Shown: piece after piece, positions 12,115 to 60,195 of the stretch | How positions within the stretch are numbered: position 1 is the stretch's first letter | Layout of the letters: every line of letters starts with the position of its first letter | Virus record (IMG/VR): IMGVR_UViG_3300028840_001395 | Location: 186,001-250,000 of that record | DNA length: 64,000 bases | Strand: one strand, 5' to 3' | The notes under the pieces: model-generated | Database searches by the model: none | What the model was told of the DNA's origin: nothing | The model's input: the letters and a program-made list of their open reading frames with translations, nothing else | Position numbers and translations under genes: made by a program

Positions 12115-12117
12115 GGG

Positions 12118-12146
12118 GCTTACTTCCGGCCCGGTGAGAGTAGTCT
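12118..12146 (+). promoter_or_regulatory. Phage motif promoter copy 9 (ligase N-half)
   Basis: GCTTAC-N17-TAGTCT then GGAGG. Confidence 0.8.
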
Positions 12147-30888: not shown

Positions 30889-31793
30889 GCGTGCCTCTTG
30901 AACCAGTCGTAGGTCTTGCGAATGCCGTCCTCCAGCGAGGTCTGTGCCTGCCAGCCCAGATCCCGTAGTCGGCTCACGTCGAGCAGCTTCCGGGGCGTCC
31001 CGTCCGGCATGTCGGTGTCCCAGAGGATGTCACCCTCGTATCCCACCACTTCCTTCAGCAGGGAGGCCAGTTCCGCAATCGTGAGATCTTCACCCACCCC
31101 GACGTTGACGAAGTTGTCCCGTCCGTCCGCATCGAAGTGCTCCATCAGGAACACCAGAGCGTCGGCCAGGTCATCCACGTAGAGGAACTCCCGGCGGGGT
31201 GCCCCCGTCCCCCACAGAGTCACCGAGGGCAATCCTGCGACTTTGGCATCGTGGAAGCGCCGCAGTAGGGCGGGCAGGACGTGGCTCCCGTGGGGGTCGA
31301 AGTTGTCGCCGGGGCCGTAGAGGTTCGTGGGCATCGCGGCGATGAAGTTGGTGCCGTGCTGCCGGTTGTAGCTCTGGCACATCAGGATGCCCGCGATCTT
31401 GGCGATGGCGTAGGCGTCGTTGGTCGGCTCCAGTGGCCCGGTCAGGAGGTGATCTTCTTGCATCGGTTGCGGCGCGAGCTTGGGATAGATGCAGGATGAC
31501 CCGAGGAACAGCAGCTTGCGGACACCGTGGCGATAAGCTGCATCGATCACGTTGGTCTGGATCTGGAGGTTGACCCGAAGGAAGTCCGCCGGGTAGGTGT
31601 CGTTGGCCAGAATCCCGCCCACCTTGGCTGCTGCGAGGAATACACCTTCGGGCTGCTCCTCGGAGAAGAACTCATCCACCGCCTGCGGGTCGGTGAGGTC
31701 GAGCTGGTCACGGTCGCGGACGAGGGGCGGTGTTGGGAGCCTCCGACACAAGGCGGACCCGACGAGGCCCTTATGACCGGCTACATACCACAT
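30885..31793 (-). CDS. fcl: GDP-L-fucose synthase
   Basis: [60 protein letters not shown]. Confidence 0.96.
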
Positions 31794-32482
31794 CACAGGT
31801 CTCGTGGAGCCTGCGGGGCGACCGGTTTCTCCCGGCCCTGTGCCCTCTCCACATCCTTTGCACTGCTCAGCATACACTGGTCACAGTGGAGCGGGAGATC
31901 GCCAATCTTCTCTTTCCAGTCGGGGTTGTCCTCCAGCTTGAGGCCCTTCCCGAGCGGAACACAGCAGGGATAAACGAACCCGTCCAGGCAAATGGTCGTG
32001 GTGTACTTGTTATTGCAGTCTCGTGGGTCTTGCCCAGGAGCCGACCAATGCACCGTCTTGGCCTCGGCTAGCTGGACACGCCCCTCGCAGTAGTGCCGGA
32101 GTTCCTGGATGGTGTGAGTGTTGCTCTTGCATCCTGGGTGGGTCTCGGAGGTGAGGACAGGGACTCGCACGGCATCGAAGTAGTCGAGGATGTCCAAGTG
32201 ATCAAGGATCAGATCCCCGTTGGTGGCCAAGAAGATCTTGTCGTAGGAATAGCCCTCACTGACGGCCTTGACCACCTCCTTCAGGCGAGGGTGAAGCAAA
32301 GGCTCCCCTCCCGTGATGCAGAGGTTGGGGATGTGGCCGATCAGGGGGGCCAGCTTCATGAGGAAATCCACATCCCAGTGCTGCGCCTTCCTGTGAGGGA
32401 TCCGAAAGCTACACGAGGGGCATTTCCTGTTACACGCGGTCGTGATCATCAGAGCCAGCAAGTGGAGGGGTGCTGTAGCCAC
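31793..32482 (-). CDS. Radical SAM protein with short SPASM/twitch-like C-terminal region
   Basis: CNRKCPSC (CxxxCxxC), [15 protein letters not shown]-terminal Cys cluster. Confidence 0.85.
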
Positions 32483-32483
32483 T

Positions 32484-33146
32484 TCAGCCCTCCTCGACAG
32501 GGGCATTGAGATCTTCCACGATGGCTACCACCTCTCGATACAAGAGATGGGCGGCTCCCTTTCCAAGGTGTATTCCATCCTCGGTAAATCCCTCCAAGAT
32601 GGCCCCCTCGGAGTCCACCACCTTGCTCCAGAGATCGCAGTAGCTCACTCCTCGGTTGCGGCATTCCTGCGCCAACAAGTCGTTGACCTTGATCGTCAGT
32701 TCCCGCCGTTCCTCCAAGCTGCCTTCACAGGGGAAATTGCGATTACGGCTGTTCATCGCCGGACTCACACTTAAAACGAATGACTGAGACTTGGTAAGCC
32801 TGGAAAATTCGGTGATGGTGTTCAGGTAAGGATGGACGAGCTTGGGCAGGGTTTCTGATCCCTGCTGTTCTGTGATACGGACGAGATGGCACCGCACATC
32901 AATCTCTCCGGACACCCATGCGATAACACTACCTGGGACAATCCTCGGGAGCCAGTTCCAAGAGTCCTCGCCAATACCTGCTTCCTTGATGGAAGCAAGA
33001 CCTTGAACCCCATCTCGGCCCACCCGGTGCATTGTCACAGGGCCAAGATGATGGACACACCCCTTATTGGCCAGGGGGAGGAACAACTGAGTATGACTAT
33101 CCCCGATAGCATGGAGATTCTGGATTCTGGTGTATTCCTGGCTCAA
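32484..33146 (-). CDS. SGNH/GDSL-like hydrolase (possible O-acyl modifying enzyme)
   Basis: IGDSH, GEIDVRCH, DGIHL; TTG start inferred. Confidence 0.7.
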   Translation of the reverse strand: MSQEYTRIQNLHAIGDSHTQLFLPLANKGCVHHLGPVTMHRVGRDGVQGLASIKEAGIGEDSWNWLPRIVPGSVIAWVSGEIDVRCHLVRITEQQGSETLPKLVHPYLNTITEFSRLTKSQSFVLSVSPAMNSRNRNFPCEGSLEERRELTIKVNDLLAQECRNRGVSYCDLWSKVVDSEGAILEGFTEDGIHLGKGAAHLLYREVVAIVEDLNAPVEEG

Positions 33147-33156
33147 GAGGTACCTC

Positions 33157-33765
33157 TTACTCGAACTTGTAACCGAACCGCTCCAAGTCCTCTGCGAAGA
33201 TCCTCTCCAAGAGCGCCCGTGATTCGTCGTCGTAGTAGTCCCGGTAGTCCTTCTTCCGTTGGGTGATGTTGACGTGGGGGAACTCGATCCTCGGGAGGCC
33301 CATCCGCTTCCGAAGATCGTGGACACAGGTGGGCAGCTCCTCGAACTTGAGCACCACATCCACGATCTGCTGACCATCCTCGTCCGTGACGAACTCGGTC
33401 AGCGTGGCATAGGAGTTGACCCCGTAGACCCGAGGCTCCTTGGTCTTCATCTCGTACCAGCGCAGGTACTCTGCGAGGCTCTTGCCCTGCATGAACTTGT
33501 GGAAGTTGTGGCCCGGCTTCTGGACGATGTAGAAGTAGGTGGAAAGCATCCAGTCGAAGGGATTGCGGACCATCAGGAACTTCAAAGCATCGTTCCACTC
33601 TTGAATCCGGCCCTTCGACTCGAACCACTTCTTCACGTCCCGAGGCAGAACGTGCCCACCCAGGATATCATCGCCACAACCCTCGAACACCTTCCGAAGG
33701 GACATCCCCCCTGTGCGGAAGATGTGGAAGAACAGGTAATTGTCGTCAGCATTGAAAAGAGCCAC
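33157..33765 (-). CDS. Sulfotransferase family 2 protein
   Basis: FFHIFRTGGMSL (PAPS loop), VRNPFDWMLSTY, KFEEL, DYRDYYD, DLERFGYKF. Confidence 0.85.
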   Translation of the reverse strand: MALFNADDNYLFFHIFRTGGMSLRKVFEGCGDDILGGHVLPRDVKKWFESKGRIQEWNDALKFLMVRNPFDWMLSTYFYIVQKPGHNFHKFMQGKSLAEYLRWYEMKTKEPRVYGVNSYATLTEFVTDEDGQQIVDVVLKFEELPTCVHDLRKRMGLPRIEFPHVNITQRKKDYRDYYDDESRALLERIFAEDLERFGYKFE

Positions 33766-33806
33766 GGGTATATCCTTTCGGGTTCTCGGTCAGTTTGTCG
33801 TCCACC

Positions 33807-34541
33807 TTACTTCCGAATGAGCACGAACCCTGCACTCAGATAGGGACGCCTCGCTGACGGAAGGCTGTTGGTCTGTATGTCATCGTAGAACTCCCGAGCC
33901 TGCTCCCGATACGCCTCGGTGTCCGGCAGATCGGTCGGCTCGGCTACCGTGGCCAAGTCCTCCACGGCTGCGAACAGATCACGGAAAGCGTCCGCATCGA
34001 AGTTGAACTGCTCGGGCCAACTTTGGTGGGGTTCCGGCCACTCCCCTTGCTGGTAGTAAGTGGCCACCTCAAAGGCCGGGACAGTCACCACGAGGGGAGC
34101 ACCGGGCTTCAGGAGTGACAGCAGGTTCCTGACGATTCGCAGAATCTTGTCCCAGTCGTTGTGCTCGATGGCACTGAGGCTCAGGATGCCATCGAAGGAG
34201 CCGGGGTCAAGCATGGGAGTATCTTCCAGATCCGATTGGATCAGGGTGGCCCGAGTGATGCAGTCCTGGTGGTGATGCCCTGGCTTGACATCGACGTTCA
34301 CAGCTTCGCCGTAGTTCTCAGCCAGGAAGTGCTGCATCGAACTCTGACCACCTCCAGCATCCATCACACGGGCCTTGTCGTGCGGCTGCTGGACGTAGGT
34401 AGCCAGCTTCTCACAAGCCCAGGAGTACTCTGCCGTGTAGGGCCAACGATCTGGCCACTTATACCCAGGACGCCGCTTCTCTCGAATCACAGCATGTTGC
34501 TGAAGAACGTCTTCCACACGGTAGTCGAGGGGGATAAGCAT
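33807..34541 (-). CDS. Class I SAM-dependent methyltransferase
   Basis: RVMDAGGG, FDGILSLSAIEH, LLKPGAPLVVTVP. Confidence 0.8.
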   Translation of the reverse strand: MLIPLDYRVEDVLQQHAVIREKRRPGYKWPDRWPYTAEYSWACEKLATYVQQPHDKARVMDAGGGQSSMQHFLAENYGEAVNVDVKPGHHHQDCITRATLIQSDLEDTPMLDPGSFDGILSLSAIEHNDWDKILRIVRNLLSLLKPGAPLVVTVPAFEVATYYQQGEWPEPHQSWPEQFNFDADAFRDLFAAVEDLATVAEPTDLPDTEAYREQAREFYDDIQTNSLPSARRPYLSAGFVLIRK

Positions 34542-34546
34542 GAGAT

Positions 34547-37500
34547 TTACCTCTTGATTCCGAGAAGATTCAGAGAGACGGTGTCGTAGGATGACCAGTC
34601 CCTCACCGCCTTGATCTCCGGTACTTCGTTACTCTTCCATTCCTTGATATCCTTGAACCCTGCTGCGATCAGCAGCTTGGTCAGGGACTCCTTCACGAAG
34701 GTCTGCTTGTGGCGGTCGGGTTCCTCCGCCGCCTTGCGGAAGTCTCCGAACAGGGGAGCGTTGGGGTCTTTTCCGAACTTGTGCGACTCGACGCAGTTGG
34801 CCACGATGAGTCGCAGATCAGGAACCGCGACCCGAAGGATACCTCCAGGACGTAGCGCCTGGTGCCAGTTCCGTAGGATGTCGAGGGTTTCCTCGGCGTA
34901 GAAGTGCTCAAGGACATGGCAGGCGTAGATCTCGGAATAGGCCGCGCTCGGGAGAGCTTCGTGGGCGTCGAGCACCTGATCGACTGCCGGGCCGGGCCTC
35001 AAGTCCGTGTTGATGTAGCCCTTGATGTGCTTGTCGCCACAGGCGATGTGGAGCTTCAGTTCTTTCTGGGGCGGGGTGGGTTCCACGATGTCTACCTCGG
35101 GAATCGAGACAGTTTCATGGTTTCCGGTTGGGAGCGCCAAGCCCCTCTGTCGGCGTTCCTCCCGGACGATGGCGAGAAGTTGTTCCATTGCAACGTCCCA
35201 CGTCCAGTGGTCACGGGCCAGTTCGTATCCGGCCTGCTGAATGACAGCCCTGTCCGCATCCCGTTCGGGTCTCAACCAGTCCCGGAGTAGCTCGACAAGC
35301 TCCTCGTTGTCCTTCCAGATGACGCAGTTGACCCCATCTTGCAGACCGTAGCCTTCCATGTCATCGAAGTACTGGACGGCACAGAAGCCCTTGGTGATGA
35401 GGGAGTCGGGAAGTCGGTCGGAAGTGTAGCGGCGGAGCTTCTGGAAGAGGGACTGCACGACCACGACGCGGGCGACGGAATGAAGCTCTGCACGCCGAGC
35501 CCGTGCGATAAACGGGTGTGATAGGATGGGCTGGCGGAGCTTGTTCCAGGAATGTCCGTAGCAGACATACATCCCCGGAAGGGCCTTCTCGATGTCCAGC
35601 GCCATCTGAACGCGAGGTGCCACCCCCGGCCCCTTGTGGAACCCAGTGTGAGGAGACCCTGTGAAGCAGGCCTTCCCAGCCGCTTTCCAGTCCTTCGGAT
35701 TCCCCTGACGAGGCCCGTTGACGGTGGTGTCCGTCCCGATAATATGGTGCCCAGTCTTGGCCCGGACACCCATCTCTCTGAGCTTCTCGGCGTAGGTACA
35801 CTCCGACGAGAGGAACAGGTCAAGTTCCTTGCACTGATCTGCCTGCCACGCCTCAACCGGCTCGTCAATGTCCGTCCGGACATCCCCCGTCCACGACACG
35901 ATGAGGCAGTTCGGAGGGGCGAGCTTCCGCATCTGACGGATGATGCCCGAGTTGAAAGCCCTGTTCCCCTGCACCTGCATCCAGATCAGAGTTGGCTGGT
36001 GCGTCCTGATCAGCTCATAGACCTCTTCATACATCCGATTGAGACCGACCTTCTGCCTTCGTTCGTTCCAACGGATCGTCTGATATGGCCCCATCCTTGC
36101 CAAAGCCAGACAGTGACCATGTTGGGCTTCATGCGACCCGGCAAGAGAGACGTGCAGGACTCTCTCGGGAGGCCCGGCTTCAATCGGTGACCGCCGGTGA
36201 GGCATCCCCCGCTTAGGGTTGTACACGTTGGGCCAACCCATCGGGTCTCGGGTGATAGGCCTCGCGTACTTCTTGTTGTATTTCTTATGCCACGCATCCC
36301 GGTGCTTATTGAGGCGCGTTGAGTTGGCTTCCCTGTTGGGATCGTCCAGAGTCTCATTCACCAGGTCGATGAGCGTCACATCAGGCTTACGCTCCATCTT
36401 CCAACCCAGCCGATGTCCTCGCAGCCCCCAGGCCGAGTCTCCCCCGTAGGTGTGATGTGTCCGGGTGTTTTCGTCGCCCCAGAAGGCCCCGAAGCCTTCC
36501 GCGATGATGTCCTCGCACATCTCCCGGCGAGCAACGACCTGGTTGGGGTGAGGAAGACCAGGGGCTTGAGGGAAGTCCATCTTCATGTAGGTCTTACCCC
36601 GGTCACGGCTCATGTGAAAAGCCACGGCCCCGAGAGTTGGGTCGGAGTCCAGGTGCCGTATCGCGTTCGCTATCGACTTCCCTTCGATGATGATGTCGTC
36701 GTTGATCTGACAGATGAACCTGCCCTTGGACGCTTCATACGCCCGGTTGAAAGCCGGAATCGCCCCCTCCATCCCTCCCAGGATGGGCCGGATATCAGAC
36801 TGCTCCTTCATCCACGTCATGGATGTGTCGGACTCATCGCCGTAGGCGATGACGATCTCGTAGGTGTAGTCGGAATCCTTGAGGCTCTCGCGGACAGATG
36901 CCACGCATTCCTTGAGCATCTCCGGTCGGTTGACTGTTCCCAGAATCACCGAGCAGTCGATAGGAGCCGCCGTGACCATGCGAGAGATATCCCGCTGCAG
37001 ATCAGGATGGAGGGGGGGAGGGGCAGGCTCGGGGATAACCTCGGGAGGCTTCTGTGGATGCCTGTTCTTCCACTTTCGCACGGAGTCCCGCATCGGCTTC
37101 CGACCGATGCGGGAAGGAGCTTCCTCGACCGGAACCGGAGGCTGATCCCCCCGGAGAGACTTCAGGAGCTTCCTCATGTCCTCCGGAATGTCCTCTGCAT
37201 CATCGAGGCTACCCTGACCGATGATCTCGAAGGAGCCCTTGCGTGAACGACCTTCTCGCTCCAACACCGCCCGGTTCCAGATGTTGTCCGCGTGCTGCAA
37301 GCAGACGATGAGGTCGATCTCCTTGGTGATATCCTTGAACACCGGGCGGGTGTTCATCCCCTTGCGGAAAGCTGCGGCCATCGGGCCGTCTTTGCCCCGT
37401 GCCCGCTCCGGCCAACCCCCGACCTTGCGGAGATGCTCTCCTGCGAAGGAGATGCTCGTCCCGATGAGTCCCTGCTCGGCCCGGCCTGTCCACCGCATCA

Positions 37501-38524
37501 CCCGATCTTCGGCCAGCGCGTAGAACAAAACCTCCGCGACACCCGACCAGTGAGCACCCTCATCGTGAGCCCGACAGGCTGCAGCCAGGCGACCGATGGG
37601 CTGGATGTCGTCATCGTCAGCCAAGAGCACCAGGTCAACGGTCGGACCCGCCGCCTGAAGAATGGCGTTGAGCTTCGAGGTCACCGTCTGACTGGTCACC
37701 TCAACGTAGCGCACCCGCTCCATCTTCTGCACGAGGCCCTTGCCTGCATCGGTGGGCTCCCCACCGACCAGAATCTCGTAGTCCCAACCCGCAGGCACAG
37801 TCTGCTGCTGAAGTCGCTTCAGGCAGGCTTCGAGCAACTTGGGGCGATGGGTCGTGGCGACGAAGAACGCAGCCCTCTTGCTACGAGTGGGCTTGGTCTG
37901 TCTTGGACTGGGCTTGACGGTGGGTGTCACCTTGGGGGCAGTTTGGGGCTTCGGCTTGGGCTTCTTCTTGGGAGCAGGGACCGTCCGGTCAACAAGGCTT
38001 CGGGCCACTCGATAGGTGGCGAGGTTCTTGATATTGGGCCATTCCCGCAAGTACTGCTCGGAGACCATGTAGCAGTGGTCGAGCTTCCCCGCGTTCTCCA
38101 AGGCCACCACGGGCTGGGGGAGGATATCCTTCGCTTCCGCCTCCCCTACCAGATTCAGAGCACCCAGCTTGTCCGGGGAGAGCTTGCCCCACGTCTTGAT
38201 CGCGCTGGCGAAGAAGTGTTGCGGGAGCGTCAGGCCCGAATGCAAGAAGAAGTTGTAGTCGGCAGGGTGGTCAGCCCACTTCTGATGGCACCACTCCCGG
38301 TACACGGGGGCTGACAGCTTCCGCTTGGACAGGAAGTAGCCCCACCCCTGCTTCTGGATGATCTTCCAGGCCGCGCTGAAGTCGCTCTTGAGCGCATTGT
38401 TGCAGACGATGACGTGAACCTGATAGAGCCGGGTCAACGTCTCCAGGTGGGCCAGCAGATTCTTGAGCCCGTTGGCCCCACTCCCTGCCGACACGAGGAT
38501 GGAGATCGAAGGCTTCTTGGTCAT
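34547..38524 (-). CDS. Giant multidomain glycosyltransferase (about three GT2-like domains + GT-B/CgeB-like domain + C-terminal methyltransferase), ~1325 aa
   Basis: SILVS; VATTHRP...LADDDD; SVILGTVNRP...QINDD; TSDRLPDSL...WTWD; KLHIACG...YINTD...CHVLEHF...LRPGGILRVAVPD. Confidence 0.85.
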   Translation of the reverse strand: MTKKPSISILVSAGSGANGLKNLLAHLETLTRLYQVHVIVCNNALKSDFSAAWKIIQKQGWGYFLSKRKLSAPVYREWCHQKWADHPADYNFFLHSGLTLPQHFFASAIKTWGKLSPDKLGALNLVGEAEAKDILPQPVVALENAGKLDHCYMVSEQYLREWPNIKNLATYRVARSLVDRTVPAPKKKPKPKPQTAPKVTPTVKPSPRQTKPTRSKRAAFFVATTHRPKLLEACLKRLQQQTVPAGWDYEILVGGEPTDAGKGLVQKMERVRYVEVTSQTVTSKLNAILQAAGPTVDLVLLADDDDIQPIGRLAAACRAHDEGAHWSGVAEVLFYALAEDRVMRWTGRAEQGLIGTSISFAGEHLRKVGGWPERARGKDGPMAAAFRKGMNTRPVFKDITKEIDLIVCLQHADNIWNRAVLEREGRSRKGSFEIIGQGSLDDAEDIPEDMRKLLKSLRGDQPPVPVEEAPSRIGRKPMRDSVRKWKNRHPQKPPEVIPEPAPPPLHPDLQRDISRMVTAAPIDCSVILGTVNRPEMLKECVASVRESLKDSDYTYEIVIAYGDESDTSMTWMKEQSDIRPILGGMEGAIPAFNRAYEASKGRFICQINDDIIIEGKSIANAIRHLDSDPTLGAVAFHMSRDRGKTYMKMDFPQAPGLPHPNQVVARREMCEDIIAEGFGAFWGDENTRTHHTYGGDSAWGLRGHRLGWKMERKPDVTLIDLVNETLDDPNREANSTRLNKHRDAWHKKYNKKYARPITRDPMGWPNVYNPKRGMPHRRSPIEAGPPERVLHVSLAGSHEAQHGHCLALARMGPYQTIRWNERRQKVGLNRMYEEVYELIRTHQPTLIWMQVQGNRAFNSGIIRQMRKLAPPNCLIVSWTGDVRTDIDEPVEAWQADQCKELDLFLSSECTYAEKLREMGVRAKTGHHIIGTDTTVNGPRQGNPKDWKAAGKACFTGSPHTGFHKGPGVAPRVQMALDIEKALPGMYVCYGHSWNKLRQPILSHPFIARARRAELHSVARVVVVQSLFQKLRRYTSDRLPDSLITKGFCAVQYFDDMEGYGLQDGVNCVIWKDNEELVELLRDWLRPERDADRAVIQQAGYELARDHWTWDVAMEQLLAIVREERRQRGLALPTGNHETVSIPEVDIVEPTPPQKELKLHIACGDKHIKGYINTDLRPGPAVDQVLDAHEALPSAAYSEIYACHVLEHFYAEETLDILRNWHQALRPGGILRVAVPDLRLIVANCVESHKFGKDPNAPLFGDFRKAAEEPDRHKQTFVKESLTKLLIAAGFKDIKEWKSNEVPEIKAVRDWSSYDTVSLNLLGIKR

Positions 38525-39546
38525 CAGAACCAATCCAGGCCGAACACGGCGTTGCGGACTTCATCCCAGTAGGCGAACTCTCGACACTCATCCAAGGAGT
38601 ACGTCTTGCGAAGCTCCGACCCGAACGTCGTGATGCGGGCCAACAGCCCAAGCTCGTTCTGGAAGTGCCACCACTCGGCTCCGCCCGCGTTGCCCGAAGT
38701 GAAGAAGCTCCGCCGGGCGCGGATGCGGTTGAAGCCGTGCTTGAGGGCGACATCGGTGAAGCTGAAGAACACCCCCTGCACCCGCTTGGTTGTCGGGATG
38801 TGGACGGTATTGCCCCCCGAGTCCTTCTGCTCGATGACCTGCCATGCCTCGATGGTCATCTTACCACCGGCCACGGAGCCGCCGTAGAGCTTCTTGATGA
38901 GCGCATCCTTGTCCAACGAGGACCGGCACCAGACCTCCCAGTGTCGGTCGGAGTGCGGGTCGGCTTCGATGATGTAGGGGTCTGTCTCGGGATCGGCCAT
39001 CCCTGACAAGGGAGCGAGGTCGAAGGCCCGTCCGACATAGTGGAAGGACTTCTTCGAGCGGTTGGCGTTCGACCCCGCCGTGAGCAACCTCCGGCCACCC
39101 GCCGAGGTGACGATGCCACCGAGGTCGTGAACCTCGTCATAGAGGGCCTGGTAGAAGGGTGCGATGTCTGACCGGAGAACGGTGCCCTCGTTGCCCTGGC
39201 CGTTGAACTGGTCAGCCGGGCAGGCGGGCCAGTAGGGCTTGGTCAGGTTGAGCTGGCTGCCGTCATCGTCGCTCGGCTCGATCTCGGTATCGGGGGTCAC
39301 ATCTACGTTGTAGTCGATGTGGTAGGCTGCTCCCCCGTCGCCCAGAGCGAAGTTGTAGGCCGAAAGGGTGCTGTCCCCCACCTCACCATCCGAAAGGAGC
39401 CCAGAGGCCGTCTGGAAGGCGCTGACGGCTCTTTCTGTCCCCTCTCCGAACACCCCATCTGCGATGCCGGGATGATAGCCCAGGTAGGCGAGTCCTAGCT
39501 GGAGGTTGCGGACATCCTCTCCGCGTGATCCTATCCTCAGAATCAT
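38524..39546 (-). CDS. Peptidoglycan-binding + M15-like zinc peptidase (endolysin or virion lysin)
   Basis: PG_binding_1 pattern LRIGSRGEDVRNLQ...DGVFGEGTERAVSAFQ...DGEVG; SFHYVGRAFD and EWWHFQ. Confidence 0.85.
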   Translation of the reverse strand: MILRIGSRGEDVRNLQLGLAYLGYHPGIADGVFGEGTERAVSAFQTASGLLSDGEVGDSTLSAYNFALGDGGAAYHIDYNVDVTPDTEIEPSDDDGSQLNLTKPYWPACPADQFNGQGNEGTVLRSDIAPFYQALYDEVHDLGGIVTSAGGRRLLTAGSNANRSKKSFHYVGRAFDLAPLSGMADPETDPYIIEADPHSDRHWEVWCRSSLDKDALIKKLYGGSVAGGKMTIEAWQVIEQKDSGGNTVHIPTTKRVQGVFFSFTDVALKHGFNRIRARRSFFTSGNAGGAEWWHFQNELGLLARITTFGSELRKTYSLDECREFAYWDEVRNAVFGLDWF

Positions 39547-51322: not shown

Positions 51323-51327
51323 CGGGG

Positions 51328-51356
51328 GCTTACTCGCGTGCGGAATGGAGTAGTCT
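51328..51356 (+). promoter_or_regulatory. Phage motif promoter copy 18 (back-to-back pair)
   Basis: GCTTAC-N17-TAGTCT. Confidence 0.8.
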
Positions 51357-55385: not shown

Positions 55386-55414
55386 ATAGTAGGGGCCTTC
55401 TGGCCCCGTGTCAA
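55386..55414 (-). promoter_or_regulatory. Host sigma70-type promoter
   Basis: TTGACA-N17-TACTAT, near-consensus. Confidence 0.75.
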
Positions 55415-55929
55415 GATCCTTCTCCGCCTTCCATGACCGCCAGCATCGACCGGAACGTCGCCCCATCGTCCGTGGGGCCAGGAACGAGAACCTCTTTCCA
55501 GTTCGAGCCTATCTGCTTGATGACCCCCAACCGGAACTTGATGATGGCCTTGGCCTCGACCTGGCGGATGCGCTCACGGGTCAGGTTGAACAGCTCACCC
55601 ACCTTCTCCAAGGTGAGGCCATCTGGATTCCTCTCGGCCACGTCGAGGACACAGCTCTCCCCTCCGATGTGCTCTCCCGCTTCGACCTCGGGGAAGTTCG
55701 GCATGATGGAGCCAGCGTGGCTCACGTCGAGGTAGAGGTTGTACTTGCAGGTGACGTAGGGACAGGGCCGAACCCCGTGCCTGCAATGCGCCCGGAGACG
55801 GGGGAGATGACGGGGTGTCCTCGGCCCCTGGAGAGGTTCTTCGTTGTTGACCGGGATGGTCTTCTTGAACTTGCGTTTCGGGTTCATCTCGGGATCGATC
55901 TGAAGTGCTGTGGCTCCTTCTTCCATCAC
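55411..55929 (-). CDS. Stand-alone sigma-70 region 4 HTH protein with Cys-containing N-terminal domain
   Basis: LTLEKVGELFNLTRERIRQVEAKAI (sigma region 4.2); RPCPYVTCKYNLYLDV...CVLDVAE; no sigma region 2. Confidence 0.85.
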   Translation of the reverse strand: MMEEGATALQIDPEMNPKRKFKKTIPVNNEEPLQGPRTPRHLPRLRAHCRHGVRPCPYVTCKYNLYLDVSHAGSIMPNFPEVEAGEHIGGESCVLDVAERNPDGLTLEKVGELFNLTRERIRQVEAKAIIKFRLGVIKQIGSNWKEVLVPGPTDDGATFRSMLAVMEGGEGS

Positions 55930-55942
55930 TTCCTCACGTTCA

Positions 55943-56033
55943 TGGTCGCTCCGACAGGAATCGAACCTGCGATGCGGGTGTCACCCCGAGCGGATTTAGA
56001 GTCCGCCTCCTTCGACCACTCGGACACGGAGCG
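55943..56033 (-). tRNA. Amber-suppressor tRNA (anticodon CUA), class II, encoded CCA
   Basis: CGCTCCG/CGGAGCG acceptor + A73 + CCA; D arm TCC-GAGTGGTCGAA-GGA; GCGGA-CTCTAAA-TCCGC; 19-nt variable arm; GCAGG-TTCGATT-CCTGT. Confidence 0.9.
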
Positions 56034-56043
56034 ATTGAAGTGT

Positions 56044-56258
56044 GGCGCGTGACAGGAGTCGAACCTGCATAACCCTCCCCACAAGGGGGAAGGCAAAGAA
56101 GAGGCCAGGCCTGGTCAAGAGAGGGGCCTGCGACATCCACGCCGAGCGGGCCTAGCAGGCCCGTGTCCCGACTCATCCCATCTGCATGGCGATCCACCAT
56201 GCGTGCCCTTCTTCTCCCCCGGTTAAAGCGGGGGGCCTCACCGTTGGGCTACACGCGC
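56044..56258 (-). tRNA. Ochre-anticodon (UUA) tRNA-Gln-like RNA with 148-nt insertion in the variable region
   Basis: GCGCGTG/CACGCGC acceptor; GCC-CAACGGTGA-GGC D arm; CCCCG-CTTTAAC-CGGGG anticodon arm; GCAGG-TTCGACT-CCTGT T arm; no canonical encoded CCA (C73-ACA). Confidence 0.65.
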
Positions 56259-56268
56259 ACTGTCCTCT

Positions 56269-56297
56269 ATACTACTCTCTAAGGCGGGAGGATAAGC
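56269..56297 (-). promoter_or_regulatory. Phage motif promoter copy 19 (TAGTAT variant, tRNA operon)
   Basis: GCTTAT-N17-TAGTAT, 10 nt upstream of the first tRNA base. Confidence 0.8.
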
Positions 56298-56779
56298 CCA
56301 GGAGCATCGAAGTGGGCCATCCCCCCATCCCACCAGCCTACCCGAGCCTTGAACGCAGGATAGCCCTTTCTTATGTCCATGTCACCCGATTTCTTGCGGA
56401 TCAGGTCATTCGCGTAGGCCGGAACCACCCCCGTGGCCGTCGAGACTGTGACGTGGGGAGTCCGGCCCGCTACAGTCCGGAACTTCGTGGGAGGTTTCAC
56501 AATGAGCACCTGGGCCTTCTCATCCGAGACCTCCCCGACCACCTTGACCGCGACCGACTTGCCCCACGGGAGACTGTGGGGCCTTGTCTCTTCGCCGTCC
56601 TTGAAGTGCCAGATGGTCATGTGGTGAGCGAGTCTGACAGGGAAGCTCGGGGGAAAGGCCCGAAGGAGTCGTTGGCGGTCTTGGGAGGCGATGAACAGGG
56701 CGATGTAGATCACGCCATCGTCGGGGTGTCCAGCAACACGTCGCAGCCACCTGGCCGCGACTCGGTTGGCTGCTATCAC
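56279..56779 (-). CDS. 2H phosphoesterase (cyclic phosphodiesterase, tRNA-ligase CPD-like)
   Basis: Two Hx(T/S) motifs: AHHMTI and PHVTVST. Confidence 0.75.
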   Translation of the reverse strand: MIAANRVAARWLRRVAGHPDDGVIYIALFIASQDRQRLLRAFPPSFPVRLAHHMTIWHFKDGEETRPHSLPWGKSVAVKVVGEVSDEKAQVLIVKPPTKFRTVAGRTPHVTVSTATGVVPAYANDLIRKKSGDMDIRKGYPAFKARVGWWDGGMAHFDAPGLILPP

Positions 56780-57198
56780 GTAGTACCCGGCGGAGTGGGG
56801 ATCACCGAGGTTTCAAGCCAGTATCTCTTGACATCCTTCAGAAGGTTCTCCAGGTCACCATAGTTGATCGGCTTGACCACGTAGGAGTTCGCCCCATCGT
56901 AGAAAGACTGGAAGATGTCCGCCTCCAGCTTCGAGGTCGTCATCACGATCACCGGGATGTGGCGCAAGCTCGGATCATTCCGGATTTCCCGGAGGGCTTC
57001 CTGGCCGTCCATCAAGGGCATCTGCAAGTCGAGCATGACCACATCGGGTAACTTGCCCGACCGGAGACGCTCCAAGAGCTTCTGACCGTTCTCGACCCGC
57101 TCGACTTGAAGCGAGCAGTCGCAGTCCTTCATCGCTTCCTGAATGAGAACCCAGTCCTCACGATCATCTTCGGCAAAAAGAACCAGCGGGTCACTCAT
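56776..57198 (-). CDS. Single-domain response regulator (Rcp1/CheY-like)
   Basis: LFAEDD, PDVVMLDLQMPLMDG, IPVIVMTTS, GANSYVVKP. Confidence 0.93.
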   Translation of the reverse strand: MSDPLVLFAEDDREDWVLIQEAMKDCDCSLQVERVENGQKLLERLRSGKLPDVVMLDLQMPLMDGQEALREIRNDPSLRHIPVIVMTTSKLEADIFQSFYDGANSYVVKPINYGDLENLLKDVKRYWLETSVIPTPPGTT

Positions 57199-58288
57199 TG
57201 TGGGACTCCGGGGTCAAAGGGATTCTGATAATGAACGCAGCGCCGACGCCAGGTTCACCGCGAGCTTCGATGGTCGCCCCATACTGCTCAAGCAGACGAC
57301 GACAGAGGGCCAAACCAATACCCGTACCGGGATAGTCAAAGCGGGTGTGCAGCCTCGTGAACACCTCGAAGATCTTGTCCGCGTGCCCCTGGTCGAAACC
57401 AATGCCATTGTCCTGAACCACCACCACCGCGTCGTCTCCCTCGACGGTGCCGTGAATCTTGATCACCAAGGGGCGTTCGGGGTGGCGGAACTTGAGTGCA
57501 TTGGACAGGAGATTGGCGAACACCTGCCGAATCTGCATCGTATGGGCATGGACGGTCGGAAGTTCCCCCACCACGACCTCGGCGTTCGCCTCCTGCACCC
57601 TCAACTCAAGGTCTTGCAGGGCTTCCCGCAGCACACGACCCAGATCGACCACCATGAGAGGTACGTCGGTGTATCCAGCCCGTGCGTAGCTCAGCAGGTT
57701 ATCGATGAGATGGGACATCCGTTCTGTGGCCGAGAGCATCACCTGGAGATATTCGGCCCCGCGTTGGTCTATCTGGTCACTATACTTCTCTGTGAGGATC
57801 TTCCCGAACCCCTTGATCTTGTTCAAAGGTTCCCGGAGGTCGTGAGAGGCAGCATAGGCGAAGCTCTGGAGGGCTCGGTTGGAGGACTCAAGTTGCTTGG
57901 TGCGCTCCTGAACAGCATCTTCGAGCTTCTTCTGGGCCTTCTTCTGCTCGGACACATCCCTGATCACAACGATCACCTCGTTGTCTCCCGAGGCAGAGAA
58001 GCGGGCCTCGAACACACAGTCGGGGAACTCGTCCAGGGTGTATTCCCAGAGCAGGACTTCGCCGGTCTCCAAAGCTCCGAGGATGTAGTGCATCGCCTGT
58101 TCAGTGAACTCGGCGTCAAAGATCTCACCGACGGTCCGACCCACATACTCACTCGGAGAGACAAGCGACGGAACCTTCCCGACATGGGTGTCGAGGAATC
58201 GACCTTCTCGATTGAGCAGGTGGAGCATGTCCGGAGTTGCCCGAACGAATGCTCGGTAACGAGCCTCAATCGTGGTCAAGTGATCCAT
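57191..58288 (-). CDS. PAS-domain sensor histidine kinase (HisKA + HATPase_c)
   Basis: N-terminal PAS; ASHDLREPL (H box); NLLSNALKF; DNGIG; GTGIGLALC. Confidence 0.93.
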   Translation of the reverse strand: MDHLTTIEARYRAFVRATPDMLHLLNREGRFLDTHVGKVPSLVSPSEYVGRTVGEIFDAEFTEQAMHYILGALETGEVLLWEYTLDEFPDCVFEARFSASGDNEVIVVIRDVSEQKKAQKKLEDAVQERTKQLESSNRALQSFAYAASHDLREPLNKIKGFGKILTEKYSDQIDQRGAEYLQVMLSATERMSHLIDNLLSYARAGYTDVPLMVVDLGRVLREALQDLELRVQEANAEVVVGELPTVHAHTMQIRQVFANLLSNALKFRHPERPLVIKIHGTVEGDDAVVVVQDNGIGFDQGHADKIFEVFTRLHTRFDYPGTGIGLALCRRLLEQYGATIEARGEPGVGAAFIIRIPLTPESHNE

Positions 58289-59073
58289 CCCGACCCCGAC
58301 GCACTCACCATGCTCTTGAGGTCTTTCAAGTCCTTGAGCTTGTCCACGTTGAGTGCATCGAGCAGGAGTACGAACAGAACAGCGACGAGCACCAAGCACA
58401 GGAACATGACGATGGCGGCGACGGGATGGGCACCAATCCACTCAAGTGCCCACTTCCAGGCAGACTTGTTGGCGTTCTTGACCTCCTCCAGAATCGCATC
58501 GTGCTGGGTCTTGTCCTCCTCGGCCCGACGCTTCATCCCCTGGGAGAAGTCACGTCGAAGCTCTGACATCTCCTGAGAGGTCTTGGTCTGGGCCTGGACG
58601 GACTCTCGGGTCAACCCCACAAGCTGCTCGATGAGAACTCCGACACCGGGCGCACCGTCACCATTCTGGCGGCGCTTCTCCTGCACCCCGATGGCATAGA
58701 GGCAAGTGCGCTCCAGCAGGTCGCCCCCAAAGGTGCCCTTCTCCAGATACTCGACAGCCCCGATGTCCATTGCCTGAAGCTGAAGGTTCCGGTCTCCATG
58801 ACTGGTCACGATGATGACAGGAGTATGGAAGTGCAGCTCGTGGAGCTTGCGGAGAAACGTGATGCCGTCACTGTCCGGCAGCTTGTAGTCGAGGAGGACT
58901 ACATCGTAGCGGTGATGCGTCTGCTGGAGTTGGTAGAAGCCTTCCTGTGCCGTGTGCGCGTCGTCAACGACGAACTTCGCTCGGCTGGCGTCCTCTAGCA
59001 GATCCCGGATGAGACGGCAATCGTCCTGATCGTCATCAATCACCAAGACCCGGACGGTCAAAGGAGAAGGCAT
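58276..59073 (-). CDS. Response regulator receiver fused to a coiled coil and C-terminal TM helix
   Basis: LVIDDDQDD, VLLDYKLPDSDG, IIVTSHG, YLEKG; then coiled coil and VAAIVMFLCLVLVAVLFVLLL. Confidence 0.85.
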   Translation of the reverse strand: MPSPLTVRVLVIDDDQDDCRLIRDLLEDASRAKFVVDDAHTAQEGFYQLQQTHHRYDVVLLDYKLPDSDGITFLRKLHELHFHTPVIIVTSHGDRNLQLQAMDIGAVEYLEKGTFGGDLLERTCLYAIGVQEKRRQNGDGAPGVGVLIEQLVGLTRESVQAQTKTSQEMSELRRDFSQGMKRRAEEDKTQHDAILEEVKNANKSAWKWALEWIGAHPVAAIVMFLCLVLVAVLFVLLLDALNVDKLKDLKDLKSMVSASGSGWIT

Positions 59074-59095
59074 CTAAGTCCACCCCGCACCCCTG

Positions 59096-60133
59096 TCAGG
59101 AGCAGTAGGAAAGCTGCTTGGTCAGGTAGCGGTTGAGGTTCGTGAGCGCCCGGAACAGCGTGCGACTGTCGTCCACCGTCGCATGAATGGCCTTTTCGAG
59201 ATAGTTGTCGATCTTCCGGGCCATCGTGCTGTCCTGGCGAGCGACCTTGGCAAGCAAGACCGAAGCCCGGTCAAGGGCAGTCTGGATGGCCTCCGCATCC
59301 GGCTCATAGCCGCCCTTGATGAGATCCATCGCCGTGCTGATCTCGACCTGAAGCTGCTTCAGGCCAGGGATGCACACGGTCACGCTCTGGGTGCCCCAGC
59401 CGAAGCCCACGTCGCGGGCCAGACCCACCGGGTACTCGCCCTGGGGCAGCTTCTTGCCGTCCACCGGGGAGACATGGTTGCGACCGAAGGCGTCCACGTA
59501 GCCGTGGCTCACGCGCTTGGCGTAGTGCTTCTGAAGCTCACGCTTGGCCATGTTGAGGTCAGGGAACCAGAATCGCTGGTCGGTATCGAACTTGGCCCCG
59601 TCGATGCGACCCGTTGCGCCGGAGTCCGTCATCGCGCCCCAGCGCCGGATGACCTTGAAGCCACCCTCGTCCGGGACGACCATGCCCTCGTAGAACTTCG
59701 ACTTGTTCTTCGCGGCATCGATCAGGTAGACCATGAAAGCCTCACCCGCCTTGACCTTGTTCCGGTTCAGGCCCTCCCGTTGCAGGATCGGCTTGTGGGC
59801 CACCTTGCGGAGCAGGGCATACTTCTCCATGCAGGTCAGGCCCGCCCACTTCTGGACGGTCATGCCCTGCTTCTGGTAGCAGAAGCACGCGATCTTCGCG
59901 GCCTCGACGGCTTCGAGGCGCATCTCATGGGCCTGCTTGAGCAGTGGGATGAGGTGCTGCCGGGTCTCCGGGTTATCGGAGGCGCACTTCTGCATCTCAG
60001 CCAGCAGACCCGACTCCTGGGCCTCGCTCAGCTCCACGAACTCATCCTGGTCGAACACGTCCAGGTAGGGCTGATCGGGGGTCATCGTCTGGTGCTTCTT
60101 CTTGGCACCGATTTCCTGGGGGTCAAAGTCCAT
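59096..60133 (-). CDS. WGR-domain protein (non-catalytic)
   Basis: KNKSKFYEGMVV...KVIRRWGA...KRVSHGY in the centre; helical flanks. Confidence 0.65.
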   Translation of the reverse strand: MDFDPQEIGAKKKHQTMTPDQPYLDVFDQDEFVELSEAQESGLLAEMQKCASDNPETRQHLIPLLKQAHEMRLEAVEAAKIACFCYQKQGMTVQKWAGLTCMEKYALLRKVAHKPILQREGLNRNKVKAGEAFMVYLIDAAKNKSKFYEGMVVPDEGGFKVIRRWGAMTDSGATGRIDGAKFDTDQRFWFPDLNMAKRELQKHYAKRVSHGYVDAFGRNHVSPVDGKKLPQGEYPVGLARDVGFGWGTQSVTVCIPGLKQLQVEISTAMDLIKGGYEPDAEAIQTALDRASVLLAKVARQDSTMARKIDNYLEKAIHATVDDSRTLFRALTNLNRYLTKQLSYCS

Positions 60134-60195
60134 CACATCCTCCCGCAAGGGTATTCGTCTCCACCCCTACGGAAATATCAAAGCCCTACCGAGAA

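What the first reader, a model, noticed from the sequence alone, without database searches (positions are those of the whole stretch)
55943..56033. Amber tRNA has chimeric identity elements (supF-like anticodon arm, C1:G72, A73, long variable arm)
Seen: GCGGA-CUCUAAA-UCCGC is like tRNA-Tyr (GCAGA-CUGUAAA-UCUGC) with G34C, plus A73, but the first pair is C1:G72 and the variable arm is 19 nt. Known: bacterial TyrRS needs G1:C72, while archaeal/eukaryal TyrRS uses C1:G72; SerRS and LeuRS read the long variable arm and largely ignore the anticodon. Inference: the amino acid inserted is uncertain (Ser, Leu or Tyr), and the tRNA might be orthogonal to the host and need a phage synthetase encoded elsewhere, which would be of synthetic-biology interest.
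Basis: partly seen in the sequence, partly recalled or inferred. Interest (0 to 1): 0.65.

Follow-up and report, generated by a model that had tools for sequence, protein, structure and literature searches.

The report
Tyrosine-type amber suppressor tRNA in huge phage
A 436-kb phage that uses the ordinary genetic code carries a well-formed, promoter-driven tRNA that reads the UAG stop codon; it looks like a tyrosine tRNA with a reversed first base pair and a longer side arm, has one clear relative in an unrelated phage, and the phage encodes no enzyme of its own to charge it.

Summary
Window 55943-56033 (minus strand) encodes a 91-nt tRNA with anticodon CUA, C1:G72, A73, encoded CCA and a 19-nt variable arm (Rfam 55 bits). 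Compared region by region with 17 Tyr, 32 Ser and 6 Leu references, its anticodon stem, T arm, discriminator and variable-arm base geometry are Tyr-type. Its D arm fits Tyr and Ser equally. Only the variable-arm length is Ser-like, and nothing is Leu-like. A sister tRNA in an unrelated 101-kb phage contig (L075) has the same layout: 34/38 unpaired bases identical and 14/25 pairs changed on both sides yet still paired. So this is a selected, functional tRNA family. L075 has G1:C72, so the first-pair orientation is not fixed in the family. The phage's own tRNA-Tyr(GUA) also has C1:G72. The complete 435.8-kb genome encodes none of seven synthetase families and no class I release factor. It is not recoded: TAG ends about 35% of genes. 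The tRNA shares a phage promoter with an interrupted tRNA(UUA). Most likely it is a supF-like, host-charged tyrosine-inserting amber suppressor. The idea of an orthogonal pair with a phage synthetase is not supported. Its biological role in a genome rich in TAG stops is unresolved.

The parts
55943..56033 (-). tRNA(CUA), class II, Tyr-type body, C1:G72, A73, 19-nt variable arm, CCA encoded; anticodon at 55999-55997
   Evidence: ARAGORN, Rfam 55 bits, arm-by-arm parse, isotype comparison, covariation with L075
56044..56258 (-). Interrupted tRNA-like gene with anticodon loop CUUUAAC (UUA, ochre-type), 10 nt upstream of the amber tRNA. A 140-nt insert follows the anticodon loop (alternative reading: 147 nt in the variable region). 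G1:C72, discriminator C, no CCA encoded.
   Evidence: The MFE fold keeps the cloverleaf, z = -3.0. No Rfam family at E<=1. The insert is single-copy.
56269..56298 (-). Phage promoter-like motif GGCTTAT-N15-AGTAGTAT, ending 10 nt upstream of the first base of the tRNA(UUA)-tRNA(CUA) pair
   Evidence: 10 copies in the window against 0 expected from 100 shuffles. 35 copies in the genome against about 0 in shuffles, usually 17-20 nt before an RBS and start codon; also precedes the tmRNA and another tRNA.
55411..55929 (-). Downstream gene for a 172-aa protein with sigma-70 region 4. Its start lies about 14-17 nt after the tRNA's CCA with no terminator between, so it is probably co-transcribed.
   Evidence: Pfam Sigma70_r4 28.5 bits; sequence; no minus-strand terminator
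56279..56713 (-). Upstream gene for a small 2H-phosphoesterase-like protein (two HxTx motifs). Its TAG stop lies inside the promoter motif.
   Evidence: Pfam tRNA_lig_CPD E 1.7e-3, below cut-off; motifs HMTI and HVTV in the translation

Best explanation
This is a functional, phage-encoded amber suppressor tRNA of tyrosine type, a natural counterpart of E. coli supF. Its D arm, anticodon arm, T arm, A73 discriminator and variable-arm base geometry are those of bacterial-type tRNA-Tyr, with C34 in place of G34. It is transcribed from a phage-specific promoter together with an interrupted tRNA(UUA) and probably a sigma-region-4 gene. It would be cut out by host RNase P and 3' processing, with CCA already encoded. 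Because the phage has no synthetase, it would be charged by the host TyrRS, mainly through A73, U35 and the variable arm. It would then insert tyrosine at UAG in competition with RF1. The phage uses the standard code, so the effect would be partial read-through of TAG stops rather than sense decoding. C1:G72 is a lineage-specific acceptor feature shared with one of the phage's own tRNA-Tyr(GUA) genes. It reflects either the acceptor rule of the unknown host's TyrRS or a deliberately weakened substrate. Shown: the tRNA, its features, its Tyr-type body, family covariation, the promoter motif, the absence of synthetases and release factor, and standard code. Inferred: charging with Tyr by the host enzyme, actual suppression, and the biological purpose.
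For: A real, canonical tRNA. Against GenBank phages, positions 7-45 match annotated tRNA-Tyr at 87-94% in most hit records, with no Ser or Leu hit. U8-U45 equals the consensus of five phage tRNA-Tyr genes except G34C. Against 301 and 201 bacterial genomes the best body identities are Tyr 0.89, Ser 0.79, Leu 0.68. The anticodon stem is identical to cellular Tyr, with the A31:U39 pair where Ser has U31:A39. T-arm mean identity is 0.79 for Tyr and 0.64 for Ser. A73 matches 17/17 Tyr, while Ser has G in 31/32. Variable-arm unpaired bases are 1 on the 5' side and 4 on the 3' side, like Tyr (1 and 3) and unlike Ser (1 and 1). The sister tRNA L075 has the same 88-nt layout, 34/38 unpaired positions identical, 18/50 stem positions identical and 14/25 compensatory pairs, with A73 and CUA conserved. 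The phage's own Tyr(GUA) has C1:G72 and A73. The promoter motif sits directly upstream. There is no synthetase of seven Pfam families and no RF. The standard code scores best: density 0.907 against 0.859, with stops TGA 289, TAG 171, TAA 34. The A36-A37-A38 context suits i6A37 modification as in supF (established knowledge). A73 and U35 are the critical Tyr determinants (PMC9976931).
Against: C1:G72 is the reverse of the bacterial Tyr rule and is held to explain non-cross-reactivity (PMC1934993), so a canonical host TyrRS may charge it poorly. The 19-nt variable arm is longer than in any of 17 Tyr references (10-15 nt) and falls in the Ser range. The D arm is identical to cellular tRNA-Ser(GGA), and CUA is also one substitution from Ser CGA. 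The host and its TyrRS are unknown. There is no RNA or protein evidence of expression, charging or suppression. TAG ends about 35% of phage genes, with no enrichment of back-up stops (median 28 against 26 codons, p = 0.23) and no excess of read-through fusions, so the benefit of suppression is unclear.
Confidence: 0.58

Rival explanations
1. It is a serine-inserting (supD-like) amber suppressor. It derives from tRNA-Ser(CGA) by G35U and is charged by host SerRS through its long variable arm, which ignores the anticodon.
For: The D arm is 100% identical to cellular tRNA-Ser(GGA) in 4 genomes. The 19-nt variable arm lies within the Ser range of 15-24 nt. tRNA-Ser(CGA) is the best hit in one phylum sample (E 5e-9). 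G2:C71 is present. Serine identity relies mainly on the variable arm (PMC9976931). Ser-type (G73) class II CUA tRNAs exist in other phages (L077, L079).
Against: A73 instead of G73 (31/32 Ser references have G). C1:G72, although G1-C72 is described as absolutely conserved in most bacterial tRNA-Ser (PMC9976931). The 31:39 pair and anticodon stem are Tyr-type (mean identity 0.84 for Tyr, 0.56 for Ser). The T arm is Tyr-like. The variable stem is only 4 bp with 4 unpaired 3' bases, against 5-7 bp and 1 base in Ser. A73 is conserved in the sister tRNA L075.
Confidence: 0.13
2. It is a deliberately weak or mischarged suppressor. A canonical host TyrRS rejects C1:G72, so the tRNA is charged only slowly, or partly by LysRS or GlnRS through U35 and A73. 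That would give low-level read-through which a genome rich in TAG stops can tolerate.
For: The 1:72 orientation is held to explain non-cross-reaction of Tyr systems (PMC1934993). A C1:G72 amber tRNA-Tyr is slightly mis-lysylated in an E. coli system (PMC1483225). TAG ends 35% of phage genes without protective back-up stops, which is easier to reconcile with weak suppression.
Against: The phage also keeps a C1:G72 tRNA-Tyr with the sense anticodon GUA, which would be pointless if such tRNAs were not charged usefully. Two Tyr-type lineages carry C1:G72 here while their nearest relatives carry G1:C72, which looks like adaptation rather than decay.
Confidence: 0.12
3. It has a non-translational role or is a pseudo-tRNA. 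It could serve as an RNA-processing punctuation mark for the downstream sigma-like mRNA, as a decoy for a host tRNA-targeting nuclease, or be an inert relic.
For: It is embedded in a probable polycistronic unit about 14-17 nt before a coding gene, with no terminator. The phage carries RtcB and a 2H phosphoesterase, which are typical tRNA-repair functions. No target TAG codons were found.
Against: All canonical tertiary positions, the 7-nt anticodon loop, A37 and CCA are intact. Loops, anticodon and discriminator are conserved and stems covary with L075, which argues for selection on a decoding tRNA. A mere processing signal would not need a conserved CUA anticodon loop.
Confidence: 0.09
4. It is the tRNA half of an orthogonal pair charged by a phage-encoded synthetase.
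For: The acceptor end is atypical (C1:G72). Some huge phages do encode synthetases: the 415-kb phage behind L079 has a PF00579 enzyme.
Against: No match to PF00579, PF00587, PF00133, PF00749, PF00152 or PF01409 in six-frame searches of a genome rated 100% complete with terminal repeats, while controls hit 14/14 reference genomes.
Confidence: 0.03
5. It is the decoding tRNA of a TAG-recoded (code-15-like) genome or genome segment.
For: This is the usual context of phage CUA tRNAs (Borges preprint 10.1101/2021.08.26.457843; PMC13037316).
Against: The standard code gives the highest coding density and score. TAG terminates 171 of 494 called genes. Same-frame TAG junctions all show a restart (RBS plus ATG/GTG, often the promoter motif). 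RtcB and GDP-mannose dehydratase are full-length without internal stops. No RF2 gene was found.
Confidence: 0.02

Closest known systems
E. coli supF (su+3), tRNA-Tyr(CUA) amber suppressor
   Same: Class II tRNA-Tyr body with G34 changed to C, anticodon loop CUCUAAA, A73, A36-A37-A38 context, and charging expected from the resident TyrRS.
   Different: supF is a laboratory mutant of a host gene with G1:C72 and a 13-nt variable arm (from memory). This tRNA is a natural phage gene with C1:G72 and a 19-nt arm, and it belongs to a small covarying phage family.
Suppressor tRNAs of stop-codon-recoded phages (crAss-like, Lak, Agate, Jade; Borges et al., 10.1101/2021.08.26.457843)
   Same: Phage-encoded tRNA with a stop-reading anticodon, most often charged by host enzymes.
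   Different: Those phages are low-GC and depleted in TAG or TGA stops. They carry in-frame stops in late genes, reassign TAG to Gln or TGA to Trp, and sometimes encode RF2 or a synthetase. This genome is 62% GC, uses the standard code, ends 35% of genes in TAG, and has a Tyr-type class II tRNA with no RF or synthetase.
CPR-bacterial tRNA-Tyr with C1-G72 plus V-arm (Mukai et al. 2017, PMC5370408)
   Same: Combines a bacterial-type long variable arm with the archaeal/eukaryal C1:G72 and A73 acceptor end.
   Different: Those are cellular GUA tRNAs paired with an archaeal-type TyrRS in the same genome. Here the tRNA is viral, has CUA, and no such enzyme is encoded by the phage. The host is unknown and unlikely to be CPR given a 436-kb, 62% GC phage (inference).
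IMG/VR contig IMGVR_UViG_3300035208_002958 tRNA(CUA) (locus L075:11226-11313, minus)
   Same: Identical element layout; 34/38 unpaired bases identical; the same variable arm (U, 4 bp, GURACA, CAUC); A73; CUA; standard-code context.
   Different: G1:C72, no encoded CCA, its own sigma-70-type promoter and upstream terminator, a 41% GC phage in which TAG stops are rare (1/16).

Membership tests
tRNA (Rfam RF00005), canonical elongator cloverleaf | 7-bp acceptor, D, anticodon and T arms, conserved U8, A14, G18G19, U33, GTTCRA T loop, score above the gathering threshold | tested here: met
   55 bits against 29, model positions 1-71 of 71; ARAGORN cloverleaf
Amber suppressor tRNA | Anticodon CUA in a 7-nt loop with U33 and a purine at 37 | tested here: met
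   Loop CUCUAAA
Amber suppressor tRNA | Inserts an amino acid at UAG in vivo | not testable with these tools
   No RNA or proteome data; only DNA contigs in public runs
Bacterial-type tRNA-Tyr | Discriminator A73 | tested here: met
   A73; 17/17 Tyr references have A
Bacterial-type tRNA-Tyr | U35 (major anticodon determinant) and G34 | tested here: inconclusive
   U35 is present. G34 is replaced by C, as in supF-type suppressors, so this does not exclude Tyr charging (PMC9976931)
Bacterial-type tRNA-Tyr | G1:C72 first pair | tested here: not met
   C1:G72. 16/17 Tyr references have G1; the exception is the phage's own Tyr(GUA)
Bacterial-type tRNA-Tyr | Long variable arm with a short stem and about 3 unpaired 3' bases | tested here: met
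   4-bp stem, 1 unpaired base 5' and 4 unpaired 3'; but total length is 19 nt against 10-15 in references
Bacterial-type tRNA-Tyr | D arm, anticodon stem and T arm sequence resemble tRNA-Tyr more than other class II tRNAs | tested here: met
   Best body identity Tyr 0.89, Ser 0.79, Leu 0.68; annotated phage hits are Tyr only
Archaeal/eukaryal-type Tyr identity (incl. the CPR variant with V-arm) | C1:G72 plus A73 | tested here: met
   rule from PMC1934993 and PMC5370408
Archaeal/eukaryal-type Tyr identity (incl. the CPR variant with V-arm) | Cognate archaeal-type TyrRS available (phage or host) | tested here: inconclusive
   None in the phage (PF00579, no hit). The host is unknown, so the host enzyme cannot be examined
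Bacterial tRNA-Ser | G73, G1:C72 and G2:C71 | tested here: not met
   A73 and C1:G72; only G2:C71 fits (PMC9976931)
Bacterial tRNA-Ser | Long variable arm (5-7 bp stem, one unpaired base on each side) | tested here: not met
   The length fits (19 nt), but the stem is 4 bp with 4 unpaired 3' bases
Bacterial tRNA-Leu | A73 plus the hinge determinants A15-U48, the G18G19 position and A20a | tested here: not met
   A73 is present, but it has G15:C48 and a D loop AGUGGUCGA of Ser/Tyr layout, where all six phage Leu tRNAs have the Leu-type core GGAAU(U)GG(U/G)AGAC (rule from PMC9976931)
tRNA-Pyl (ARAGORN's label) | Compact tRNA with a 3-nt variable loop and a small D loop, plus PylRS | tested here: not met
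   19-nt variable arm and 9-nt D loop; no PF01409-type enzyme. The label follows from the anticodon alone
Stop-codon-recoded phage (TAG as sense) | In-frame TAG in genes and better gene models with TAG as sense; often RF2 | tested here: not met

The most novel reading that the evidence does not exclude
Two independent Tyr-type tRNA lineages in this phage, the amber tRNA and one tRNA-Tyr(GUA), carry C1:G72 although their nearest relatives (L075, Aeromonas phage TS3) carry G1:C72. This would mean the phage is adapted to a high-GC, non-CPR bacterial host whose TyrRS uses the archaeal/eukaryal acceptor rule or ignores pair 1:72. Together with the co-transcribed interrupted tRNA(UUA), the amber tRNA would form a promoter-timed read-through module in a standard-code phage. 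That module would extend a subset of the 171 TAG-ended (and 34 TAA-ended) proteins at a defined stage of infection, a use of suppressor tRNAs distinct from stop-codon recoding.
Probability: 0.15. Interest if true: 0.75.

Novelty: new variant of a known kind. Interest (0 to 1): 0.5.

Why it matters
Phage suppressor tRNAs are currently understood as tools of stop-codon recoding in low-GC lineages depleted in TAG or TGA stops. This case and its sister L075 show a distinct, structurally conserved class II, Tyr-type amber suppressor in phages that keep the standard code, and here TAG ends a third of the genes. That raises the question of what regulated read-through does for such a phage. The C1:G72 acceptor end on a V-arm-bearing Tyr body, shared with a sense tRNA-Tyr of the same phage, is a natural experiment on the 1:72 species barrier of TyrRS and hints at an unrecognised host Tyr identity rule. 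For synthetic biology the pair L075 (G1:C72) and this tRNA (C1:G72) offers matched natural scaffolds for testing orthogonality. There is, however, no ready-made phage synthetase partner.

Tried and rejected
- **Whole-genome or regional TAG recoding:** rejected. My own codon-model gene caller gave the best density and score under the standard code, and the same-frame stop clusters are ordinary *M junctions.
- **Back-up stops after TAG:** no enrichment.
- **Read-through fusion partners:** no excess. TAG pairs are in the same frame 37% of the time, about the one-third expected; the TAG/TGA difference comes from TGA overlaps.
- **TAG-stop cold spot ending at the tRNA gene:** scan-statistic P is 0.006-0.024 for windows of 30-60 genes and 0.25 for 20 genes. 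It is real but ambiguous, because the block is a sugar-nucleotide and glycosyltransferase island that may simply be horizontally acquired.
- **Close relatives of the phage:** none found by neighbour proteins, by the promoter motif, or by the tRNA pattern in JGI metagenomes (which found only the same phage).
- **Host:** not identified. The histidine kinase's best hit is 39% identical, to an Actinomycetota MAG.
- **Read laying:** no variants in or near the tRNA and no RNA runs.
- **The variable arm elsewhere:** not found with any other anticodon in IMG/VR. In 401 Pseudomonadota genomes it occurs only at chance level.
- **Giant genes after TAG junctions:** orphans with no Pfam or PHROG family apart from one SNF2 helicase. 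I did not read them through with another code, because the genome shows no recoding.
- **TAG=Y:** used once, only as a test on L075, with no gain.
- **Origin of the acceptor and T arm from tRNA-Arg(CCU):** suggestive only; my rough estimate puts it near chance after multiple comparisons.
- **Complex prediction, structure prediction and the big protein searches:** not used, because no claim here rests on them.

Full report
**What is there**

ARAGORN finds one tRNA in the 64-kb window, at 55943-56033 on the minus strand, with anticodon CUA. Rfam's tRNA model scores it at 55 bits against a gathering score of 29, E 4e-9. Read from the sequence, it is:

- acceptor CGCUCCG / CGGAGCG (C1:G72, G2:C71), then U8 G9
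- D arm UCCG-AGUGGUCGA-AGGA, then G26
- anticodon arm GCGGA-CUCUAAA-UCCGC
- variable arm U-CGGG-GUGACA-CCCG-CAUC (19 nt)
- T arm GCAGG-UUCGAUU-CCUGU
- discriminator A73, then an encoded CCA

ARAGORN's "Pyl" label reflects only the anticodon. The tRNA has none of the compact tRNA-Pyl features, and the genome has no PylRS-type enzyme.

**Genomic setting**

The window is bases 186001-250000 of a single 435,804-bp IMG/VR virus record. The record has direct terminal repeats (a 144-bp end overlap), is rated 100% complete, and is 62% GC. It comes from sediment and seawater metagenomes. A second assembly of 435,783 bp carries an identical tRNA.

The genome encodes about 70 tRNAs and a tmRNA, in arrays at 85-123 kb. 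The amber tRNA sits alone at 241.9 kb.

**The genome is not recoded**

My own codon-model gene caller compared four readings of the genome:

| Code | Coding density |
|---|---|
| Standard | 0.907 (494 genes; stops TGA 289, TAG 171, TAA 34) |
| TAG as sense | 0.859 |
| TAA as sense | 0.901 |
| TGA as sense | 0.746 |

- Same-frame stop clusters are ordinary junctions, where the stop is followed by M and a new small protein.
- Every TAG followed by a long in-frame coding stretch has a restart signal.
- RtcB and GDP-mannose dehydratase are full-length without internal stops.

**No charging enzyme and no release factor**

Six-frame searches of the whole genome found no Tyr/TrpRS, class IIa (Ser, Thr, Pro, His, Gly), Leu/Ile/ValRS, Glu/GlnRS, Asp/Asn/LysRS or Phe/PylRS-type domain, and no class I release factor. 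Each model hit its control genomes: 14 of 14 for the synthetase families and 10 of 14 for the bacterial RF family. Any charging must therefore be done by a host enzyme.

**Which amino acid**

*Annotated phages.* Against GenBank phages, positions 7-45 match annotated tRNA-Tyr genes at 87-94% in most hit records, and no hit is annotated Ser or Leu. From U8 to U45 the tRNA equals the consensus of five such tRNA-Tyr genes except for G34C.

*Cellular genomes.* The picture here is more mixed. In 301 genomes of one phylum the best hit is tRNA-Tyr(GUA), E 6e-8. In 201 genomes of another phylum it is tRNA-Ser(CGA), E 5e-9, with Tyr next at 7e-7. CUA is one substitution from both GUA and CGA.

*Region by region.* I scored the tRNA against 17 Tyr, 32 Ser and 6 Leu references:

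| Feature | Amber tRNA | Tyr | Ser | Leu |
|---|---|---|---|---|
| D arm | UCCG-AGUGGUCGA-AGGA | identical in phage Tyr | identical in cellular Ser(GGA) | different layout |
| Anticodon stem, mean identity | n/a | 0.84 (identical in several; A31:U39) | 0.56 (U31:A39) | 0.47 |
| T arm, mean identity | n/a | 0.79 | 0.64 | 0.69 |
| Best body identity (D arm + anticodon stem + T arm) | n/a | 0.89 | 0.79 | 0.68 |
| Discriminator | A | A in 17/17 | G in 31/32 | A in 6/6 |
| Variable-arm length | 19 nt | 10-15 | 15-24 | 14-18 |
| Unpaired bases at the arm's base (5' and 3') | 1 and 4 | 1 and 3 | 1 and 1 | n/a |
| First base | C | G in 16/17 | G in 31/32 | G in 6/6 |

*Measured against published identity rules* (PMC9976931):

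- Leu fails. The tRNA has G15:C48 instead of A15-U48, and a Ser/Tyr-type D loop.
- Ser fails at G73 and at G1-C72.
- Tyr passes on A73 and U35. It fails only on the bacterial 1:72 orientation.

I therefore rank Tyr well ahead of Ser, with Leu unlikely. Slight mis-lysylation of a C1:G72 amber tRNA-Tyr by a bacterial system is documented (PMC1483225), so that remains a minor possibility.

**The C1:G72 pair**

- It is not unique to this tRNA. One of the phage's two tRNA-Tyr(GUA) genes (genome 85990-86076) also has C1:G72, A73 and CCA. The other has G1:C72.
- The nearest annotated relatives of that Tyr(GUA), in Aeromonas and Vibrio phages, have G1:C72.
- Both phage tRNA-His genes are also non-canonical, so acceptor-end deviation is a general trait of this tRNA set.
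- C1-G72 with a V-arm is a known natural Tyr identity in CPR bacteria that carry an archaeal-type TyrRS (PMC5370408).
- The literature attributes the species barrier between Tyr systems to this pair (PMC1934993). So either the unknown host's TyrRS accepts C1:G72, or these tRNAs are charged weakly.
- The acceptor stem and T arm are also nearly identical to proteobacterial tRNA-Arg(CCU), which naturally has C1:G72 and A73. A mosaic origin is possible, but by my rough estimate the match is only suggestive.

**A sister tRNA and covariation**

A scan of 2.9 million IMG/VR contigs for a class II D arm followed by a CUA loop found only five loci. Most are Ser-type (G73), including one on a 415-kb contig whose phage does encode a Tyr/TrpRS-family enzyme.

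One locus is clearly the same kind of tRNA as ours: L075, on a 101-kb contig of 41% GC.

- The element-by-element layout is identical (88 nt before the CCA).
- 34 of 38 unpaired positions are identical, but only 18 of 50 stem positions.
- 14 of 25 base pairs are changed on both sides yet still paired.
- The variable arm has the same form: U, a 4-bp stem with all four pairs different, loop GUGACA against GUAACA, and spacer CAUC.
- A73 and CUA are conserved.

This is strong evidence for a functional tRNA family under selection, and against a pseudo-tRNA. In L075 the first pair is G:C, so its orientation is not fixed in the family.

The L075 locus also reads best in the standard code, has TAG at 1 of 16 stops, and gives the tRNA its own sigma-70-type promoter after a terminator.

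With the anticodon left open, the variable-arm pattern finds no other viral tRNA. In 401 proteobacterial genomes it finds only chance-level near-matches.

**Expression signals and partner**

The motif GGCTTAY-N15-AGTAGTMT occurs 35 times in the genome against about 0 in shuffles. It occurs 10 times in the window against 0 expected. It usually lies 17-20 nt before an RBS and start codon.

One copy (56269-56298, minus strand) lies directly upstream of a second tRNA-like gene at 56044-56258, which is 10 nt upstream of the amber tRNA. With introns allowed, ARAGORN calls that gene tRNA(UUA), "Stop", with a 140-nt insert. It of 20 bridged versions the same way. The native sequence folds with the cloverleaf intact, z = -3.0. 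No Rfam family, including group I introns and small ribozymes, matches at E<=1.

No opal suppressor is present in the genome.

A gene for a protein with sigma-70 region 4 starts about 14-17 nt after the amber tRNA's CCA, with no terminator between them. Upstream lies a small protein with two HxTx motifs, which marks it as a 2H phosphoesterase. The genome also encodes RtcB.

**What it does**

This part is inferred, not shown. I found no gene that needs UAG decoding.

- Back-up stops are not closer after TAG than after TGA.
- Same-frame neighbours after TAG occur at the chance rate.
- The genome-wide minimum of TAG stops ends at the tRNA gene. The scan P is 0.006-0.024 for windows of 30-60 genes and 0.25 for 20 genes. 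That block is largely a sugar-nucleotide and glycosyltransferase island, whose TGA bias may simply reflect horizontal origin.

The best-supported reading is a host-charged, tyrosine-inserting amber suppressor that gives partial read-through while its promoter class is active. Its purpose is open. It could extend particular proteins, interfere with host termination, buffer nonsense mutations, or be a first step toward recoding as proposed by Borges et al. (10.1101/2021.08.26.457843). This phage does not fit that model's starting condition of low GC and few TAG stops. L075 does.

**Limits**

- The host is unknown.
- The phage has no sampled close relatives.
- Public runs show no variation and include no RNA.
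- Gene calls come from my own simple caller.
- The reference tRNA sets were gathered by similarity to the query, so they are the closest Tyr and Ser tRNAs rather than random ones.
- I named TAG=Y only once, as a test on L075, and adopted no alternative code.

Noticed in passing
window 56044-56258 (-): Interrupted tRNA-like gene with an ochre-type anticodon (UUA). It has a ~140-147-nt structured insert bounded by a near-repeat (CGGGGGAG / UGGGGAGG), discriminator C and no encoded CCA. It matches no known intron or ribozyme family. It shares the promoter with the amber tRNA.
   Followed up: partly
window 1620-56298, 10 sites (e.g. 12117-12146 +, 51327-51356 +, 56269-56298 -): Phage-specific promoter-like motif GGCTTAY-N15-AGTAGTMT. 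There are 35 copies genome-wide against about 0 expected, concentrated at genome 44-242 kb and rare in the block of giant genes at 321-405 kb. It also precedes the tmRNA and an odd tRNA.
   Followed up: partly
window 6156-6184 (-) and 6469-6497 (-): Two promoter-motif copies with a 16-nt spacer and no ORF start within 350-670 nt downstream. These may mark unannotated non-coding RNA genes; the second is followed by GUGUAGCCCC, which resembles the 5' end of the interrupted tRNA.
   Followed up: no
window 56279-56713 (-): Small protein with two HxTx motifs (HMTI, HVTV), i.e. a 2H phosphoesterase, immediately upstream of the tRNA pair. It could act in RNA-end healing or in degrading cyclic-nucleotide signals.
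   Followed up: partly
window 56776-60148 (-): A phage-borne two-component system (response regulator, PAS-like histidine kinase, second response regulator) followed by a protein with a WGR domain. The kinase's best bacterial hit is only 39% identical.
   Followed up: partly
window 29851-39546 (-): Sugar-nucleotide and glycan island: GDP-mannose 4,6-dehydratase, an epimerase, methyltransferases, a 1328-aa multi-glycosyltransferase, and a protein with a peptidoglycan-binding domain. It coincides with the genome's lowest density of TAG stops.
   Followed up: partly
genome 412787-412950 (+), 114406-114481 (-), outside the window: tRNAs with enlarged anticodon loops (ARAGORN anticodons GGGA twice, TATC). 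One has C1:G72, A73 and CCA and its own promoter motif. They may be frameshift-suppressor-like tRNAs.
   Followed up: no
genome 108446-108598 (-), outside the window: Both tRNA-His genes lack the bacterial G-1/C73 signature. One has G1·U72 with U73, the other C1:G72 with A73.
   Followed up: no
genome 101242-102504 (+); 112409-112720, 276275-276469, 419985-420305, outside the window: A full-length RtcB RNA ligase (299 bits) lies between the tRNA arrays. ARAGORN with introns allowed also proposes three more tRNA genes with long interruptions: Leu-CAG, His-GUG and Ile-GAU. None was verified.
   Followed up: no
L079:5048-5135 (+), IMGVR_UViG_3300050120_000230 (415 kb): Another huge phage carries a Ser-type (G73) class II amber suppressor next to tRNA-Ser(UGA), and encodes a Tyr/TrpRS-family enzyme (245 bits) elsewhere on the contig.
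   Followed up: partly
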